This document shows positions 2,715 through 59,278 of a stretch of DNA of 64,000 nt, piece after piece. A program made the position numbers and the translations under genes. Every line of letters begins with the position of its first letter. The stretch's first letter is position 1. Where the stretch lies: sequence record NC_005260.1; one strand, 5' to 3'. The notes under the pieces were generated by a model. That model saw only the letters and a program-made list of their open reading frames with translations. It did not search any database and had not been told where the DNA came from.

Positions 2715-3494
2715 TTAGAATGTTAACAGGCCATCGCGAACTTTGTTGATTTCTTCGGTCAGTTCTTTTGCTTCTTTAACATACCGAGAACGTTCGTTTT
2801 GAAGTCTTGCGATTTCTTGATCCACATTTCGTTGCTTTTCAGTCAACAGTCGAATACGGTCAAACTTGTCGCCATAGTTCAGTTCGAGGAAACGATTGAC
2901 TTGAATCAAGTATTGACGTTTCATTTCGTTTTCGCTGACCGGTGGTCGAGCTGAGGTGATTGTTTGTTCTTGTTTCACAGTTTCTTCCTTCTTGAAGGGT
3001 TTCACCAGATCAGCGGCAATCAAAACTTTGTTTTCTTGCTTGAGATACGGCATCATTTTCAGCGGTTTCAGCGTCTTGAGATCCGTAGCCATAAAAATTT
3101 GGGCATCTAGTTGAAGAACGCCATTCACGACCTTGGCATAACCCAGCTTAACGAGGTTAGAGTCTGCCATTTTGTTCATCGTCTTAGCGCGTATCACCAT
3201 TCGAACACAATGGAATGATGTAAACTGATTGATACCGCGAGTAACAGAAGCAGAGTCCCATACTACGGCTTCATCGCCAACAGCAAGTTGAAACTTGTGT
3301 TTCATGTTCGTATCGTTGTGAAGACGATCGGCTTTCTTTACGTGTTCAGCGGTATAACTGTTGTACACGCGAGTTGTTTTTCCATTCACGGTAACGTTCT
3401 TGAAAAAGATGTGATTCAGAATCGCCCGGCAAGCATTATGCAGCTTGATATCGGCTTTCATCTTATTCCGATTAGATTTTACTTGACTACTCAT
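2715..3494 (-). CDS. hypothetical protein, coiled-coil C-terminus
   Basis: ORF track 259 aa. Confidence 0.75.
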   Translation of the reverse strand: MSSQVKSNRNKMKADIKLHNACRAILNHIFFKNVTVNGKTTRVYNSYTAEHVKKADRLHNDTNMKHKFQLAVGDEAVVWDSASVTRGINQFTSFHCVRMVIRAKTMNKMADSNLVKLGYAKVVNGVLQLDAQIFMATDLKTLKPLKMMPYLKQENKVLIAADLVKPFKKEETVKQEQTITSARPPVSENEMKRQYLIQVNRFLELNYGDKFDRIRLLTEKQRNVDQEIARLQNERSRYVKEAKELTEEINKVRDGLLTF

Positions 3495-27961: not shown

Positions 27962-28082
27962 ACTGCGGCGTAAGCCGCTAGATCAGAAAAGACAAAATAA
28001 AATCTCTTATAGATCTTTAATGATAATCTATTTTGTCTTCCTTAAGGTAATCAATGAGTTAGCTTCGCAGTCGCTGGCGCGA
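27962..28082. repeat. dispersed palindromic intergenic repeat, copy 1
   Basis: GCGGC-gtaa-GCCGC hairpin + 51-bp core 27989-28039 bounded by AAGACAAAATA/TATTTTGTCTT. Confidence 0.9.
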
Positions 28083-53527: not shown

Positions 53528-53760
53528 TACTCGGTTACCAGCTCGCCGTCAACTGCTTTCGGAGCTTTCAGATCAGCGATTGCTTTCAGATAAGCTTCCG
53601 GTTGAGAAGCGTCTTCGCCTACCAGGCCCAGTTCTTTAGCCAGTTGAGCAAAGAAACCCTGATAAAACTCAGTTTCTTGAGTACGGGCTTCTTGGGCATC
53701 AAACAGACGAACTTTCAGGGTGTTCAGTTGCGCTTGCAGTTGTTGAACTTGTTCTTGCAT
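53527..53760 (-). CDS. 57A: gp57A tail-fibre chaperone
   Basis: LNTLKVRLFDAQE coiled coil; synteny. Confidence 0.85.
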   Translation of the reverse strand: MQEQVQQLQAQLNTLKVRLFDAQEARTQETEFYQGFFAQLAKELGLVGEDASQPEAYLKAIADLKAPKAVDGELVTE

Positions 53761-54413
53761 TTCAATTCCTTATATGTTGTTAATACTTGATCACTAAGTG
53801 CCGCTAATGTCGCGTCATTGTGAATTATTGGTTCATGTTCTAGCGGAGTTAGTCCCCGCTCTGTGATGTGATTATCACACAGATTAGTGTCGCGATAAAC
53901 AAACATCATTTTCCCGAACTCTCGAACAAACTCGATTTCGTGAGTCTGTCTAATGTCTGGGATAATTATATCTTTATTTAGTGACTTTTTCATTAGAGGC
54001 AATAGCCAATAGTTCTTATTGACTGATACCATAATGTCAGTTCCCAGAGTCTGCATCATTCTTCGAATTGTCCACGGCTCGTTGTAATCAAGACTTTCAA
54101 TGATCTTGGTTACTTCCGTATATTCGGCGATGGATATTTTATTATAAGACAAATGCAGCCAACGTAAGCACTCTCGTATCATTTCAATATCAACCAGAAA
54201 TAGATCTTCATCACGATTGACGGTTGTTTTACCATCAAAGTCGTCAAATGTTAATCCGAGTTGTCTACCAATACCGAAGTCTAATGCGAGTTTGATTGGA
54301 AACGCGAGTGAATAAATCTCGGCATTGCCTCCCTGTTCAACTTCGTAATTTCTAATGAAACGAGCGGCAGTATCTTTGCCGCTTCGTTTTTTACCGTGAA
54401 TACCAATTAACAT
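53724..54413 (-). CDS. 1: gp1 deoxynucleoside monophosphate kinase
   Basis: MLIGIHGKKRSGKDT, RRMMQTLGTD, IPDIRQTHE; start at 54413. Confidence 0.9.
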   Translation of the reverse strand: MLIGIHGKKRSGKDTAARFIRNYEVEQGGNAEIYSLAFPIKLALDFGIGRQLGLTFDDFDGKTTVNRDEDLFLVDIEMIRECLRWLHLSYNKISIAEYTEVTKIIESLDYNEPWTIRRMMQTLGTDIMVSVNKNYWLLPLMKKSLNKDIIIPDIRQTHEIEFVREFGKMMFVYRDTNLCDNHITERGLTPLEHEPIIHNDATLAALSDQVLTTYKELKCKNKFNNCKRN

Positions 54414-54420
54414 AGTTACC

Positions 54421-54990
54421 TTATGCGTGTGAATAGAATGGATGTAATTTAGGCACACTGCCATTTGATCCAGCGACATAAGGACGTATTTCTACACCGT
54501 CTTTTTCAATGACGAATGACTTATACATAAACTGAACAGGAAGAACTATCGGAGTATTACTTTCATCGGTGTACGTAAATTCTACCTCACCTAGATTAGA
54601 CGGCCAAGCGTCGATAAACTTGAATGTAAGAACGATCTTCTTCTTGGAGTTATCCAAAACGTGGAGCAGCAGTGTTCTAGGAACAGTGCCGTCAATTTGT
54701 GCAGTGCTGTTTAACTTTGCATAGTCTACCACAGATAACATCCACTTGTAAACTTCCACGTATGCGCTTAGGTGTTCATCAAGTAACACACGGATGTTAA
54801 GCGGTTCAAAGTCAACTGCGGTGCCGGGTATTTTCCCAACTGTCATTGGGTTAATAGGTATTTCAATCGGATTTATATTAATTCCAGGGATGCTCAATCC
54901 CTGGACTGCCATTTCAAATGCAACTGTGCCACCCGTGTCTGGAATATCCAGTCGGAAGTTCGTTACGTGAGCTGGATTACTATGTATCAT
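54421..54990 (-). CDS. 3: gp3 tail completion / tube terminator
   Basis: TNFRLDIP, SIPGI, FEPLNIRVLLDE, FIDAWPSNLGEVEF. Confidence 0.85.
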   Translation of the reverse strand: MIHSNPAHVTNFRLDIPDTGGTVAFEMAVQGLSIPGININPIEIPINPMTVGKIPGTAVDFEPLNIRVLLDEHLSAYVEVYKWMLSVVDYAKLNSTAQIDGTVPRTLLLHVLDNSKKKIVLTFKFIDAWPSNLGEVEFTYTDESNTPIVLPVQFMYKSFVIEKDGVEIRPYVAGSNGSVPKLHPFYSHA

Positions 54991-56834
54991 CTATTTTGCA
55001 TCCCATGTGGTGTTGTGTTTGAATATGCATGATCAGACGGGAACGCAAACGAGCTGGTATAAATGCTAGTATTGCTGTTATTGACGTTGTTTGTCATAGC
55101 CATTCTAGATTGCATAGCCGTAGCGTCTCGTTGTCTATCACGCTCCTGCTTCTCTGCCTCGGCGCGTTTCAAATTCTCTCCACTCGATTCAACAGCAGCA
55201 CTTTCTGGTGCCATACCGCTTTGAATATTAGCAACCGGAGACAGTTTCTCTTTCAGTGCATTACCGGCGTTGCTTACCATTTCAGAGACTTTACCGTCGG
55301 TAGCATAATCCGCGATATCATATAGATCACTCAATAACAAAGCGGTACCAACAAACGGAATAAACTTAGTCGCAACTCTACCAACAACTTTAGCAGCTCC
55401 AGTCAATGCAGCTTTGCCACCAAGTCTCTCCATAATACCCTTAGTGCCTGCGGCAGCAGCTTTTTGTCCGGCTTTACCTTCAACAGTTTCAGCAGCTTCA
55501 CCGAGAGCTTTACCTGGCTTCATTTCGACGTCAGGTGTTTTACCAGGCTCAATAGTTGGCTTAGGCTTTCCGTTTACATCAACATCAACATTAGGTCTAG
55601 GCTTTCCTTTCGCATCAACGTCTGTAGTCGGCTTTTTGCCGTCGATATCAGGCTTGGGTTTTTTGCCGTCAACATCAACACTAGGCTTAGGCTTTTTGAA
55701 TCCAGGGAAAGCTTTTTCGAATAATGATCCAAGCGACGACTTGATTGCACTAGCGAATTTAATTGCTAGTCCTCCTAGAGTAGTAATCAACAGGCCAAAT
55801 CGAGAGAATAATCCAGCGCCTAGACTCGATAGACTACCGAGTAAACCACCGAACATTTTCATGATGCCGCCAATCAAGATCATTTTTCCCAAGTCTTTCA
55901 GTGTGCCGATCAAAGTCTTGTGACGCTTGTCATTCTCGCCACGCTCCTTCTTATTTTCACCACGTTCTTGACGTTGCTCTTGATTGTCTTTCTTTGTCTG
56001 ATCTTCGGCGTTTACATCTTCACCTGTTTGAACTTCTCTAGATGCTTGGAATTTACTAATCTCTTTCTCCTTGAGACGTTCAAATCTATTTTCCTTTATC
56101 TTCTCTACGCCTTTGCTACCGACAAACTTAGCAAATTTGGTGCCCTTACTAGCGACTGTATTCACCGCGGATTTTGCAATCCCATATCCAGGAATATCTT
56201 TGAACAAAGCGGATTCGATACCGCTTGCCATTTGACCAAATGCACCACTCGCGGTTTCTTTGATTGTTGATAATGATTCTTTGATAAAGTTGTCGGCAGA
56301 TTTACGAATAAATCCCTTGTTATTTTCGCGCTCCTGCTTATCTGCTTTCTTCTTGTCCTCATACTCCTTTCGACTTGTCAATCCTTTGTCTTTGAGAAAC
56401 TTTTTCAACTCCGCATCCACATCCGGTTTTGTTTCCGGTGCTGGTGCTGGACTTGGTGTGTCTCCGGTCGGAACGTCAGTCTGTGCGGCAGCATTAGCCG
56501 CTTGTTCAGAATACCGAACAATCGGACTCTGACTTGCTATTTTGTTTTCTAGCTCCGTTCTACGCTGTAATGCCTTTTGATATTCGTCCTCAATTTGAGT
56601 GCTATTTCGCTGTGAGTAGGCAACCGTGTCCATATAATCGGTAGCACGTTCGGTTGCCTTGACTTTAGCTGATATAGACTTAACAAGCGTATCTTCCGCT
56701 TTCGCGACGTCGAGACTGGAATCGGTAGTCATATCGAATGCCGTTTCTAGATCCCTTGCTTGTTTTTTGGTATCATCAAGTTGTACAGCGAGCTTTAAAC
56801 TAGAGTCTTCAAGTATTTCGTTTGCTTCTTTCAC
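54987..56834 (-). CDS. gp29-like baseplate hub / tape-measure protein
   Basis: 615 aa, helical low-complexity, hydrophobic Gly-rich middle, directly downstream of the chaperone-like gene 26. Confidence 0.55.
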   Translation of the reverse strand: MKEANEILEDSSLKLAVQLDDTKKQARDLETAFDMTTDSSLDVAKAEDTLVKSISAKVKATERATDYMDTVAYSQRNSTQIEDEYQKALQRRTELENKIASQSPIVRYSEQAANAAAQTDVPTGDTPSPAPAPETKPDVDAELKKFLKDKGLTSRKEYEDKKKADKQERENNKGFIRKSADNFIKESLSTIKETASGAFGQMASGIESALFKDIPGYGIAKSAVNTVASKGTKFAKFVGSKGVEKIKENRFERLKEKEISKFQASREVQTGEDVNAEDQTKKDNQEQRQERGENKKERGENDKRHKTLIGTLKDLGKMILIGGIMKMFGGLLGSLSSLGAGLFSRFGLLITTLGGLAIKFASAIKSSLGSLFEKAFPGFKKPKPSVDVDGKKPKPDIDGKKPTTDVDAKGKPRPNVDVDVNGKPKPTIEPGKTPDVEMKPGKALGEAAETVEGKAGQKAAAAGTKGIMERLGGKAALTGAAKVVGRVATKFIPFVGTALLLSDLYDIADYATDGKVSEMVSNAGNALKEKLSPVANIQSGMAPESAAVESSGENLKRAEAEKQERDRQRDATAMQSRMAMTNNVNNSNTSIYTSSFAFPSDHAYSNTTPHGMQNR

Positions 56835-57013
56835 GACTCACTAGCCTCCTTAGCTCGTTTATTTCTGTCATTAATGAATAGAGTACGATAAATGGCACGT
56901 TCGAAGGGAGTGGTAGTTTCCAATTCTTCAATCGTCCAACCCTCTTTGTGCATTTCGTAATTTACGTTGAATAAGTCGTAAACCGAATCATTGACGAGGG
57001 TCAGTCGAAAAAA
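56831..57013 (-). CDS. gp51-like C-terminal module, probably reached by -1 frameshift from gene 26
   Basis: Open -1 frame FFRLTLVNDSVYDLFNVNYEMHKEGWTIEELETTTPFERAIYRTLFINDRNKRAKEASES; slippery T TTT TTC at 57013-57007. Confidence 0.65.
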   Translation of the reverse strand, partial: FFRLTLVNDSVYDLFNVNYEMHKEGWTIEELETTTPFERAIYRTLFINDRNKRAKEASES

Positions 57014-57777
57014 TCGGAGAGTCCTCGCAGAATAACCGGCTCAGAATGTCCACACACAGGACACTTGACAGCTAATTCCATTGTAGTCTGAGGAATATCA
57101 TTCACAAACTTAGCCATTTTCTCATATCCGTCTTTGTCCAGATAATCCAATAGCTCGATCAGTTCCTCATGCTTAATATCTTCACCGACTCGCATTACGT
57201 CTCCGTTTAAGTGAACTTCCTCAACACAGCGCATTGTGATATCAAACAAATCAGATTCTTTTTCTACGTCAAAGAATTCGGATTCATATACGGTCGGATA
57301 ACGCATCTTGATTGATAGCTTATCGCTGACTTTGATCATACTTTCTGGGACGCGGGACAATTTAGCGCGGCGCAGATCAGCGTTGATTTTAATTTGAGTT
57401 GAGCACTGGTGTTGCACTTGAACTCCATTGAACATCACAGGATTGCCTTCTTCATCAACACTGTCAACCATATTCTGACAGATAAACGCAACAGGAACAA
57501 CTGAGGTGCCCTTGGAGAGCTTCCACACAGCTAGATAGATCGTCTCTATGTCGAAAATTGGAAGCGTCTCCAAATCGATTCCAGCCGTGTCAATCACGCA
57601 GTTCTTGAGAACTTGAATCATCGCTTCTTCCATAGACGACTCGCTTTCATGAGCCAACATCAAGATCTTATATTCTTTTACCAAGAATGCACGAACTCGA
57701 ACTTTCTTACCGTTTGACAGCTTGACGCTTGATTGTTGAACAGCTTCAAGAAGCATGTCCCTTGTAAACTTTGCCAT
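57001..57777 (-). CDS. 26: gp26 baseplate hub assembly protein
   Basis: VRAFLVKEYK, KMRYP, KCPVCG...LRGLSDFF; TATAAATA at 57800-57807. Confidence 0.85.
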   Translation of the reverse strand: MAKFTRDMLLEAVQQSSVKLSNGKKVRVRAFLVKEYKILMLAHESESSMEEAMIQVLKNCVIDTAGIDLETLPIFDIETIYLAVWKLSKGTSVVPVAFICQNMVDSVDEEGNPVMFNGVQVQHQCSTQIKINADLRRAKLSRVPESMIKVSDKLSIKMRYPTVYESEFFDVEKESDLFDITMRCVEEVHLNGDVMRVGEDIKHEELIELLDYLDKDGYEKMAKFVNDIPQTTMELAVKCPVCGHSEPVILRGLSDFFD

Positions 57778-57938
57778 TAAAAACTCCTTTAGTTAATCTT
57801 ATTTATAGAAACGCTCGCAAACTTCACCAATCGAATGGAGAAGCGATTCGAACTACCTATAGTACGAACGTATCAGTTAGGTAACAAATCGATTATAGAG
57901 CATTCCATATAGATAGTAATCAAGCAGGCGAGTCGATA

Positions 57939-58070
57939 GACTGCGGCGCAGCCGCTCAATTGTTACTACCTAGTTATAAAAAGACAAAATAAAATCTCTT
58001 ATAGATCTTTAATGAGAATCTATTTTGTCTTCTTCAATGAAATCAATAAGTTAGCTCACTACGTTCGCGA
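57939..58070. repeat. dispersed palindromic repeat, copy 2
   Basis: 51-bp core 57981-58031. Confidence 0.9.
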
Positions 58071-58130
58071 TCTTGCGATCATTGATTTCTGGAAGAGACT
58101 ACTTTATGAACTAATGTAAACAGTCGCTAG

Positions 58131-58241
58131 ACTGCGGCGTAGCCGCTAGAAAGACAAAATAAAATCTCTTATAGATCTTTAATGAGAATCTATCTTGTCT
58201 TTTTCAATTAAATCAATAAGTTAGCTCGCTACGCTCGCAAT
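58131..58241. repeat. dispersed palindromic repeat, copy 3
   Basis: 51-bp core 58151-58201, 170 bp from copy 2. Confidence 0.9.
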
Positions 58242-58282
58242 CTTACGATAGTTTACTGACTGGTACTTGCATCATATAATGA

Positions 58283-59278
58283 TTATGCATTTCTGATACC
58301 GCGTACCATTCCCTTAGCTCTGTTATAGAACGACTCAACCGAGTTGATCAAATTATCTTTACCGGCATGTTCGGCATGAATCATTGTGCTGACTGTAAAT
58401 TCAACCTCAAATGTCGCTACTTGGTTGTTATTCTCAAAGTCTAGTTGAACTTCACCAACTCGGGTAGGGAAACATCCGTCACTGTGAACAACGGAAGTCA
58501 TTACTCCGCGTCTGTTTAGTGTCACGATATCGATATCTCTTGCGTAATTGCTATAAAAGCCAAATGTACCCTTCTTCGGATTATGAATAGAGTTCATCCA
58601 AGTTAAAAACCAAATGCGCTCCGCATAATCGGAAGAGCAATAAAATGTCATTCTAATTGGGTCAACTGTTCTATTTCGAACTTCCGTAAACGGTTTTCGT
58701 TCGTTATAGTTTGTTTGAGTGTCGAAACTCACACCCGGTAAATTAACAGACTTGACCATTAATGCCAGATCACGGTTGACGTCATAATCAGATCCCAAGA
58801 ATCCGTCTAGTAATTCACCTGCACCAGGAATCATTCTCACTAGCGTTGGGTCAATCGCTCCCATAATATTCTTGATCTTCGGACTCAATAACTTTTTGCC
58901 CTGATTCATCGCTATATCCTGAATACGATGCCACTGAAAACTTGTACCACCGAAGAATCCACCGGTTGACTTGTTGATCGCATCACCAATCCCACCAATT
59001 GTCTCGCCTAGTGGACCCAAATGTCCCAAAATACCGTCCGCGGAAGCAACGGATTTAAAATCACCAAATCGAACAAGAAACGTATTTGCTCTTGCCAAAT
59101 CTTTATTCTCAATCACTCGCATAAAACGCGCAAAGTCCGGAGTTGAATTCGGATCATCTGCTAATCTATCTGCAATATAATCAATGCCGTCCGATAATGC
59201 CGTACTCGCCATCCCAGGAATTTTACCAGGAATCTCTTTGATATAATTCGCGGCAGTATCCATTAAACTTAAACCCAT
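58283..59278 (-). CDS. 54: gp54 baseplate tail-tube initiator
   Basis: LARANTFLVRF, MVKSVNLPG, FPTRVGEVQLDFENNNQV. Confidence 0.8.
   Translation of the reverse strand: MGLSLMDTAANYIKEIPGKIPGMASTALSDGIDYIADRLADDPNSTPDFARFMRVIENKDLARANTFLVRFGDFKSVASADGILGHLGPLGETIGGIGDAINKSTGGFFGGTSFQWHRIQDIAMNQGKKLLSPKIKNIMGAIDPTLVRMIPGAGELLDGFLGSDYDVNRDLALMVKSVNLPGVSFDTQTNYNERKPFTEVRNRTVDPIRMTFYCSSDYAERIWFLTWMNSIHNPKKGTFGFYSNYARDIDIVTLNRRGVMTSVVHSDGCFPTRVGEVQLDFENNNQVATFEVEFTVSTMIHAEHAGKDNLINSVESFYNRAKGMVRGIRNA

What the first reader, a model, noticed from the sequence alone, without database searches (positions are those of the whole stretch)
56831..57015. Probable -1 frameshift turns gene 26 into a gp51-like protein (lambda G/GT logic in a T4-like phage)
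Seen: gene 26 ends GAT TTT TTC GAC TGA, a T TTT TTC slippery heptamer. The -1 frame stays open for ~60 codons to 56831, has no SD-led start, and overlaps the tape-measure-like gene start. Known: tail chaperone genes upstream of tape measures use -1 frameshifts (Xu, Hendrix and Duda 2004). From memory, T4 gp51 is a gp26 paralog with a C-terminal extension (..NH..K..YS....M.P.ER..) resembling this frame (..NYEMHKEGWT....TTPFER..). Inference: one frameshifting gene does here what T4 hard-wired as two genes.
Basis: partly seen in the sequence, partly recalled or inferred. Interest (0 to 1): 0.75.

Follow-up and report, generated by a model that had tools for sequence, protein, structure and literature searches.

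The report
Frameshifted tail chaperone gene in Aeh1
Aeromonas phage Aeh1 appears to make its missing "gp51" tail-assembly protein by letting a fraction of ribosomes slip back one base on a run of six T's at the end of gene 26; the signal is real and widely conserved, but it was already described for T4-like phages in 2022.

Summary
The window is Aeromonas phage Aeh1 at 100% identity. Gene 26 (minus strand, 57777..57001, 258 aa) ends with an in-phase T TTT TTC heptamer at 57013..57007. The -1 frame then runs 58 codons to a TGA at 56833..56831, which overlaps the GTG start of the next ORF.

The extension has no ATG, GTG or TTG until its 19th codon, yet its first 18 codons vary like coding sequence. 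Alone, it matches the "baseplate hub assembly catalyst" (gp51) family at E 1e-13 and the C-terminus of T4 gp51. T4 gp51 covers the whole gp26-family profile plus exactly the segment that the extension matches.

The six T's are invariant in 102 of 103 related loci, which span at least four named phage families. This holds even though the amino acid before them varies. Only T4 lacks the run; T4 and three other Tevenvirinae carry a separate full-length gene 51 instead.

No conserved RNA structure follows the site. RNA polymerase slippage cannot be excluded from sequence.

However, it restates Vladimirov, Gautam and Davidson (Virology 2022), which I could not read and know only through citing papers. 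The Aeh1 records do not annotate the extension. The tape-measure identity of the downstream ORF is inferred from gene order and size only.

The parts
57800..57807 (-). TATAAATA motif 23 nt upstream of the gene 26 ATG. It resembles a T4-type late promoter; this is a lead only.
   Evidence: It is the only exact TATAAATA in the 64-kb window. The late-promoter consensus comes from general knowledge of T4. The motif was not tested.
57001..57777 (-). Gene 26, 258 aa: the short product, equivalent to a TAC-N tail or hub assembly chaperone.
   Evidence: Pfam T4_baseplate E 1.5e-54. phrog_150 E 4.6e-59, profile positions 10-232 of 282. Annotated as gp26 in AY266303.2. AlphaFold model with mean pLDDT 85.
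57007..57013 (-). In-phase slippery heptamer T TTT TTC, one sense codon before the gene 26 stop.
   Evidence: Read directly from the sequence. The T run is invariant in 102 of 103 related loci, while the two bases before it vary freely.
56831..57007 (-). -1 frame extension, 58 codons plus TGA. It is equivalent to the C-terminal segment of T4 gp51 (the TAC-C part). It has no start codon of its own before its 19th codon.
   Evidence: phrog_634 E 1.1e-13, and phrog_150 positions 236-280 at E 0.0067. A profile of extensions matches T4 gp51 residues 207-245 at E 4e-8. Variable sites in codons 1-18 fall 6/4/13 by codon position. Neither Aeh1 record annotates it.
54987..56834 (-). ORF187c, 615 aa, with a GTG start that overlaps the stop of the extension. 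Presumed tape measure (gp29 equivalent).
   Evidence: This role is inferred only. The ORF lies between gene 26 and gene 3, and its length (615 aa) is close to that of T4 gp29 (589 aa). It belongs to phrog_11300, of unknown function. It shows no similarity to T4 gp29 by BLASTP or hhalign. The ORF in the same position in Vibrio phage K491 weakly matches a tape-measure PHROG at E 1.1e-6.
54421..54990 (-). Gene 3, tail completion and terminator protein; the downstream neighbour.
   Evidence: Pfam Phage_T4_gp19 and phrog_45. Annotated as gp3.
58283..59278 (-). Gene 54, baseplate tail-tube initiator; the upstream neighbour.
   Evidence: phrog_45 E 2.6e-55. Annotated as gp54.

Best explanation
Gene 26 of Aeh1 is a two-product tail or hub assembly chaperone gene.

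Most ribosomes stop one codon after the T TTT TTC heptamer and make the 258-aa gp26. A minority slip back one base while the two Phe tRNAs sit on the heptamer, then read 58 further codons in the -1 frame. This would give a product of about 315 aa with the same architecture as T4 gp51: a gp26-like body plus a short C-terminal domain.

By analogy with lambda G/GT, the short form would coat the presumed tape measure encoded by the next ORF. The rare long form would use its extra domain to recruit tube or hub subunits.

- **Shown:** the signal, its phase, its conservation, the coding nature of the extension, and its homology and colinearity with T4 gp51.
- **Inferred:** that the shift is made by the ribosome, its frequency, the chaperone function, and the tape-measure identity of ORF187c.
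For: - **Site and frame.** The heptamer is in phase and the -1 frame is open to the next gene's start.
- **No start of its own.** There is no canonical start in the -1 frame until its 19th codon, yet codons 1-18 vary mainly at third positions (6/4/13) across six Aeromonas phages. The first residue, Arg, is shared by 96% of 89 distinct extensions.
- **Conserved T run.** It is invariant in 102 of 103 loci, including a wobble position whose codon varies among six types. The loci come from Straboviridae outside Tevenvirinae, Kyanoviridae, Pootjesviridae and Menderavirus. A Desulfovibrio phage fetched separately carries the same heptamer.
- **Variable start position.** The first start codon in the -1 frame lies 1 to 31 codons after the site. 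In 22 of 96 distinct sequences there is none within 6 codons.
- **Colinearity with T4 gp51** through phrog_150 and phrog_634.
- **Reciprocal pattern.** The four Tevenvirinae examined have a separate full-length gp51 and encode the same Phe-Phe as TTC TTT, which breaks the run.
- **No fused homologues.** All of the best 120 gp26 homologues listed are 231-259 aa long.
- **Literature.**
  - Lambda G/GT works at a low, unstimulated level with a 30:1 product ratio (PMC5009743).
  - Poly-T slippery sequences in TAC-N genes of T4-like phages are attributed to Vladimirov et al. 2022 (PMC12846349).
  - Sullivan et al. 2010 list gp51 as 'missing only in Aeh1' (PMC3037559).
Against: - No protein or RNA data were examined, so no product has been seen.
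- No conserved downstream RNA structure exists family-wide: 0 predicted pairs in 27 and in 15 sequences. The Aeh1-clade stem (z -2.96) has no compensatory changes. No Rfam family matches.
- An SD-like GAGG or GGAGG lies 8-18 nt upstream in 78 of 94 contexts. It is confounded with a conserved Gly codon, and T4, which does not shift, has it too.
- The Phe-Phe motif is also conserved as protein, so part of the T run reflects coding constraint.
- 74 of 96 relatives have a start codon within 6 codons after the site, so some independent initiation is possible in those phages.
[quoted passage not shown] One citing paper reads this as T4's two separate genes. I could not read the paper itself.
Confidence: 0.6

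Rival explanations
1. The two products are the same, but the frame change is made during transcription. RNA polymerase slips on the T run, so a fraction of mRNAs carry the two frames as one continuous ORF that is then translated normally.
For: The conserved element is a homopolymer run of six T's, or seven in L101-L103. No downstream ribosomal stimulator is conserved. The protein product would be identical, so every homology and conservation argument applies equally. The title of Vladimirov et al. [quoted passage not shown]
Against: From general knowledge of transcriptional slippage, six T's is short for efficient slippage by bacterial RNA polymerase. No conserved hairpin lies just upstream of the run; positions -9 to -1 vary freely. 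The run is always in the phase of a canonical X XXY YYZ heptamer, although the protein constraint in both frames also forces that phase. PMC10885494 reads the 2022 title as 'two separate genes', not slippage.
Confidence: 0.22
2. There is no fusion. The -1 ORF is translated on its own as a small (40-58 aa) gp51-like protein, either by termination-reinitiation at the gene 26 stop or from the internal ATG at 56953. This is how the PX29, phiAS5, K491, AF3 and cyanophage records annotate it.
For: Several records annotate a separate small 'baseplate hub assembly catalyst' ORF. In K491, Marzo and AF3 an ATG overlaps the gene 26 stop, as in coupled genes. 72 of 96 distinct sequences have an ATG within 6 codons of the site.
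Against: - Aeh1, phiAS5, S13, CC2 and phage 65 have no ATG, GTG or TTG for 18-31 codons, yet the sequence there is conserved as protein.
- The codon that overlaps the stop is CTG in Aeh1 and Ah1, TTG in PX29, and CTA in avDM12, which cannot serve as a start.
- No SD-like sequence precedes ATG 56953.
- This model does not explain the invariant wobble T or the T run.
- T4 shows that the functional unit is the gp26-like body plus this segment in one chain.
Confidence: 0.12
3. The frame break is an artefact or a lesion: either a homopolymer sequencing error in Aeh1 or a decaying gene.
For: Homopolymer runs are prone to sequencing error.
Against: The same frame arrangement occurs in 102 loci from isolates and metagenomes sequenced independently. 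All of the best 120 homologues listed stop at the same point. Both frames are under purifying selection.
Confidence: 0.02

Closest known systems
T4 gp26 / gp51 (tail assembly chaperone pair of T4-like phages; Vladimirov, Gautam and Davidson, Virology 2022, pmid 34826709)
   Same: Aeh1 gp26 is a gp26 homologue. Its -1 extension is homologous to the C-terminal 40 or so residues of T4 gp51. Short ORF plus extension are colinear with T4 gp51 on the phrog_150 profile. Citing papers attribute poly-T slippery sequences in TAC-N genes of T4-like phages to this paper.
   Different: T4 encodes the long form as a separate, uninterrupted, divergently transcribed gene, and its gene 26 has no T run. Aeh1 has one gene and needs recoding. 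I could not read the paper, so I do not know whether it treats Aeh1 explicitly.
Lambda G / GT tail assembly chaperone frameshift (Levin, Hendrix and Casjens 1993; Xu, Hendrix and Duda 2004, 2013, 2014; reviewed in PMC5009743)
   Same: A -1 shift near the 3' end of a short ORF lying just upstream of the presumed tape-measure gene. The extension ends at that gene's start, no stimulatory structure is needed, and a low-abundance long form is expected.
   Different: There is no sequence similarity. gp26 is about twice the size of gpG and carries conserved Cys pairs. The structural match to the HK97 chaperone is not significant. The tape-measure identity of the neighbour is unproven here.
Small 'gp51' ORFs of cyanophages and vibriophages (Sullivan et al. 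2010, PMC3037559)
   Same: They are the same domain, in the same -1 frame, at the same position after gene 26, with the same T TTT TTC site.
   Different: Those genomes usually have an ATG a few codons after the site, so annotators call a separate gene. Aeh1 has none, which is why the paper lists gp51 as 'missing only in Aeh1'.
TAC-N/TAC-NC loci of Vandenendeviridae and Andersonviridae with an invariant GTTTTT motif (PMC12846349)
   Same: A T-rich slippery motif at the 3' end of the short chaperone ORF, and a -1 ORF wrongly annotated as a separate hypothetical gene. Vibrio phage VAP7 (Ackermannviridae) has a gp26 homologue with this kind of variant site.
   Different: They are different phage families, and homology of their chaperones to gp26 was not tested here.

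Membership tests
Phage tail assembly chaperone with programmed -1 frameshift (lambda G/GT type) | [quoted passage not shown] | tested here: met
   T TTT TTC at 57013..57007, one codon before the stop. It is invariant in 102 of 103 loci.
Phage tail assembly chaperone with programmed -1 frameshift (lambda G/GT type) | The -1 frame is open from the site, codes for protein, and lacks its own initiation signal | tested here: met
   58 codons are open. The first start codon is the 19th codon, with no SD. Variation is biased to third positions upstream of it.
Phage tail assembly chaperone with programmed -1 frameshift (lambda G/GT type) | The gene lies immediately upstream of the tape measure gene | tested here: inconclusive
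   The next ORF (615 aa) sits between gene 26 and gene 3 and is close to T4 gp29 in size. It shows no similarity to gp29 and every record calls it hypothetical. The syntenic K491 ORF weakly matches a tape-measure PHROG.
Phage tail assembly chaperone with programmed -1 frameshift (lambda G/GT type) | The TAC fold | tested here: inconclusive
   The model is good (pLDDT 85). Foldseek against the PDB gives no hit at E <= 0.001. The HK97 tail assembly chaperone 2ob9 has the highest probability (0.51), but at E 1.1 over 66 columns.
Phage tail assembly chaperone with programmed -1 frameshift (lambda G/GT type) | Two products in a fixed ratio, both absent from virions and required for tail assembly | not testable with these tools
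   No expression or proteomic data are available here.
T4 gp26 family (Pfam PF12322, phrog_150) | A full-length match to the family profile | tested here: met
   Pfam E 1.5e-54, residues 19-257. phrog_150 E 4.6e-59.
T4 gp51 (baseplate hub assembly catalyst) | A C-terminal segment homologous to that of gp51 | tested here: met
   phrog_634 E 1.1e-13. T4 gp51 itself matches phrog_634 at E 8e-24. The extension profile matches T4 gp51 residues 207-245 at E 4e-8. Direct BLASTP of the single sequences is not significant.
T4 gp51 (baseplate hub assembly catalyst) | A gp26-like body and the C-terminal segment in one uninterrupted ORF | tested here: not met
   In Aeh1 the two parts lie in different frames. 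All of the best 120 homologues listed are 231-259 aa long. Aeh1 can therefore produce a gp51 equivalent only by recoding.

The most novel reading that the evidence does not exclude
The frame change at this deeply conserved T6 run may be made by RNA polymerase rather than the ribosome. Alternatively, it may be made by the ribosome with no stimulator at all. In either case the one-gene, slip-site arrangement would be the ancestral state for T4-like phages across several families, with T4's separate genes 26 and 51 a later duplication that fixed the long form. Comparative data here fit that direction but do not prove it, and the 2022 paper may already argue part of it.
Probability: 0.25. Interest if true: 0.45.

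Novelty: already known. Interest (0 to 1): 0.3.

Why it matters
The finding explains why gp51, a near-core T4 gene, was reported as "missing only in Aeh1". It also shows that the small "gp51" ORFs annotated in cyanophages, vibriophages and others are most likely the C-terminal part of a recoded gp26. This corrects the annotation of Aeh1 and of hundreds of related genomes. It supports the view that T4-like phages follow the near-universal chaperone-before-tape-measure, two-isoform rule of long-tailed phages. It does not open a new question, because the concept was published in 2022.

Tried and rejected
- **Word-based protein search with the 58-aa extension.** It found only 2 proteins.
- **Exhaustive phmmer with the extension.** It found 6 proteins: four small ORFs and two long repetitive proteins whose Pfam matches are low-complexity noise. 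It returned no natural in-frame fusions and no T4 gp51. A single 58-aa query is too weak; the link to T4 gp51 came from profiles.
- **Direct BLASTP of the extension against T4 gp51.** Not significant.
- **NCBIfam.** No hits for gp26, the extension or ORF187c.
- **Conserved downstream RNA structure.** None. The structure limited to the Aeh1 clade has no covariation. Rfam found nothing.
- **Fold search for a TAC fold.** Not significant.
- **ORF187c against T4 gp29.** No similarity by BLASTP or hhalign, and only a weak match to the K491 ORF.
- **The Vladimirov 2022 and Christie 2002 papers.** Neither is held.
- **No joined sequence.** I built no sequence across the two frames. All searches used the two pieces separately, and I do not repeat the junction peptide quoted in the finding.
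Full report
**Identity of the window.** The 3.4 kb around the finding is 100% identical to Aeromonas phage Aeh1 (AY266303.2 / NC_005260.1; Straboviridae, Cinqassovirus). All genes discussed lie on the minus strand. The local order is gp4, gp2, gp54, a 500-nt repeat-rich spacer, gp26, an unannotated stretch, ORF187c (615 aa, hypothetical), gp3, gp1.

**The observation.**
- Gene 26 runs 57777..57001 (258 aa; Pfam T4_baseplate E 1.5e-54).
- It ends GAT TTT TTC GAC TGA. This places an in-phase X XXY YYZ heptamer at 57013..57007.
- The -1 frame entered there is open for 58 codons and stops at 56833..56831. That stop overlaps the GTG start of ORF187c, which has its own AAGGAGG 10 nt upstream.
- Upstream of the site the -1 frame is closed after 11 codons.
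- The first ATG, GTG or TTG in the frame is the ATG at 56953, the 19th codon of the extension, and no Shine-Dalgarno-like sequence precedes it.
- The coordinates and description in the finding are correct.

**What the extension is.**
- Searched alone, the 58-aa piece matches PHROG 634, "baseplate hub assembly catalyst" (the T4 gp51 label), at E 1.1e-13. It also matches positions 236-280 of the 282-position gp26-family profile phrog_150 at E 0.0067.
- I took T4 sequences from a record that a search returned (MZ375356.1).
- On phrog_150, T4 gp51 (249 aa) covers positions 13-280 (E 1e-87). T4 gp26 (208 aa) covers 14-235, and Aeh1 gp26 covers 10-232.
- So T4 gp51 is a gp26-like body plus a C-terminal segment. 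The Aeh1 short ORF plus its -1 extension tile the same profile with no gap.
- A profile built from 89 distinct extensions, each translated in its single frame, matches T4 gp51 residues 207-245 (E 4e-8 for that comparison). It does not match T4 gp26.
- BLASTP gives E 1e-5 for T4 gp51 against T4 gp26, and E 1e-5 for T4 gp51 against Aeh1 gp26.

**Conservation of the signal.**
- I collected 103 loci: 16 annotated phage records and 87 IMG/VR contigs.
- In 102 of them the gp26 homologue carries an in-phase T TTT TTN heptamer: 98 end in C, 3 in T and 1 in G. The exception is T4.
- In 101 loci exactly one sense codon separates the heptamer from the stop.
- The -1 frame then runs 56-69 codons. It ends at or overlapping the next gene's start in the 15 annotated phage records; I did not check this in the 87 IMG/VR contigs.
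- All six T's are invariant, while the two bases before them vary freely.
- The codon that supplies the first T is AGT, TCT, GAT, GCT, AAT or GGT. The amino acid changes but the wobble T does not.
- Elsewhere in the same genes T takes 62% of such wobble positions and TTT makes up 69% of Phe codons. Other Phe-Phe pairs are mostly TTC TTT (54 of 93), and only one is TTT TTC.
- The site occurs in Aeromonas, Cronobacter and Vibrio phages of Straboviridae outside Tevenvirinae, in Kyanoviridae (a cyanophage and a pelagiphage), in Pootjesviridae (Rhizobium phage AF3), in Menderavirus (Stenotrophomonas phage Marzo) and in a Desulfovibrio phage.
- An Ackermannviridae phage has a GTT TTT C variant followed by a homologous -1 ORF.
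- Four Tevenvirinae (T4, RB69, ECML-359, UoN_LG358_1) encode the same conserved Phe-Phe as TTC TTT, which breaks the run. Gene 25 follows their gene 26, and they carry a separate full-length gene 51 of about 250 aa.
- So the T run is present where there is no separate gene 51 and absent where there is one. This is what a recoding signal predicts.

**The extension is translated from the shift site, not from its ATG.**
- Across six Aeromonas phages, the 18 codons between the site and the Aeh1 ATG have 6, 4 and 13 variable sites at codon positions 1, 2 and 3 of the -1 frame.
- This resembles the rest of the extension (18/13/34) and the end of gene 26 (10/5/16).
- The first residue after the site, Arg, is shared by 96% of distinct extensions.
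- The first canonical start codon in the -1 frame lies anywhere from 1 to 31 codons downstream. In 22 of 96 distinct sequences there is none within six codons.
- The codon that overlaps the gene 26 stop is CTG in Aeh1, TTG in PX29 and CTA in avDM12, so no conserved reinitiation codon exists.
- All of the best 120 gp26 homologues listed from the large protein collection are 231-259 aa long, so none of them is a natural in-frame fusion.

**Mechanism.**
- The heptamer allows two Phe tRNAs to re-pair after a one-base backward slip.
- I found no conserved stimulator. RNAalifold predicts no pairs in 27 diverse sequences or in 15 cyanophage-type sequences downstream of the site.
- Aeh1 alone folds into a stem starting 3 nt after the heptamer (z -2.96). 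Within its clade that stem shows no compensatory change. Rfam has no match.
- An SD-like GAGG or GGAGG lies 8-18 nt upstream in 78 of 94 contexts. It coincides with a conserved Gly codon and is present in T4 too, so it says little.
- Low, unstimulated slippage would suit a chaperone whose long form is needed rarely. Lambda G and GT are made at about 30:1 (PMC5009743).
- Slippage by RNA polymerase on the T run would give the same protein and cannot be excluded from sequence.
- My estimates: about 0.6 for ribosomal slippage, 0.2 for polymerase slippage, 0.1 for a separately initiated small protein.

**Function.**
- The chaperone role comes from the literature on T4 gp26 and gp51 and from gene order.
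- A good model of Aeh1 gp26 (pLDDT 85) has no significant structural neighbour in the PDB. The HK97 tail assembly chaperone 2ob9 gets the highest Foldseek probability (0.51), but at E 1.1 over 66 columns. This is a lead, not evidence.
- ORF187c is taken to be the tape measure because of its position and size only.
  - It shows no similarity to T4 gp29 by BLASTP or profile comparison.
  - Every record calls it hypothetical.
  - The ORF in the same position in Vibrio phage K491 matches a tape-measure PHROG only weakly (E 1.1e-6).

**What is already known.**
[quoted passage not shown] The paper is not held.
- PMC10885494 summarises it as follows: some T4-like phages carry a short gene plus a longer fusion gene instead of frameshifting.
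- PMC12846349 cites it for poly-T -1 slippery sequences in TAC-N genes of T4-like phages.
- Sullivan et al. 2010 noted that cyanophage and vibriophage gp51 lack about the first 200 residues, and that gp51 is "missing only in Aeh1" (PMC3037559).
- The present analysis explains that remark. Aeh1 has the gp51 segment, but with no start codon near the shift site gene finders did not call it. Neither Aeh1 record annotates it.

**Verdict.**
- The phenomenon is an instance of a published kind, so I rate it already known, with modest interest.
- What remains open is experimental: whether the product exists, which slippage mechanism produces it, how frequent the shift is, and what the neighbouring ORF does.

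Noticed in passing
window 57931-58249 (spacer between genes 54 and 26), and 27989-28028: There are two direct repeats of about 103 nt (57977-58079 and 58147-58249, 92% identical). Each contains an inverted repeat. There is also a 26-nt GC-rich repeat (57931-57956 and 58122-58147). A 40-nt core recurs at 27989-28028, and the 3.4-kb query hit 8 places in the Aeh1 genome. This looks like a dispersed intergenic repeat of unknown role.
   Followed up: partly
window 57800-57807, minus strand: The only TATAAATA in the 64-kb window lies 23 nt upstream of the gene 26 ATG. It resembles a T4-type late promoter. One match is below the chance expectation of 2.9 for the window, so only its position is suggestive.
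   Followed up: partly
L013, L105, L106, L107 (T4, RB69, ECML-359, UoN_LG358_1): Tevenvirinae gene 26 encodes the conserved C-terminal Phe-Phe as TTC TTT, which breaks the T run. These phages carry a separate full-length gene 51 transcribed divergently. This is the complement of the one-gene arrangement.
   Followed up: yes
L108 (Vibrio phage VAP7, Ackermannviridae), about 3085-3273: A gp26 homologue ends with a GTT TTT C variant site followed by a -1 ORF with a similar C-terminal motif. This extends the arrangement beyond Straboviridae and Kyanoviridae, and resembles the GTTTTT motif reported for other myovirus families.
   Followed up: partly
window 54987-56834 (ORF187c): The presumed tape measure has a Lys/Pro/Asp-rich repetitive middle region, which is why the record notes 'similar to histone H1'. 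It has no detectable similarity to T4 gp29.
   Followed up: partly
L004 (Aeromonas phage Ah1), gene 54: Gene 54 is annotated as two separate CDSs (54_1 and 54_2) in Ah1, so there is one break in that relative's gene. The kind of break was not examined.
   Followed up: no
P0012 (protein search): A gp26 homologue with 49% identity sits on an 88-kb contig that NCBI labels as a Culicoidibacterales bacterium MAG. This is probably a T4-like phage contig binned with a bacterial genome.
   Followed up: no
window 53724-54479 against the record's gp1: The longest ORF for dNMP kinase (251 aa from an upstream ATG) overlaps the end of gene 3 by 59 nt. The record annotates a shorter 229-aa gp1. This is a start-site ambiguity only.
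   Followed up: no
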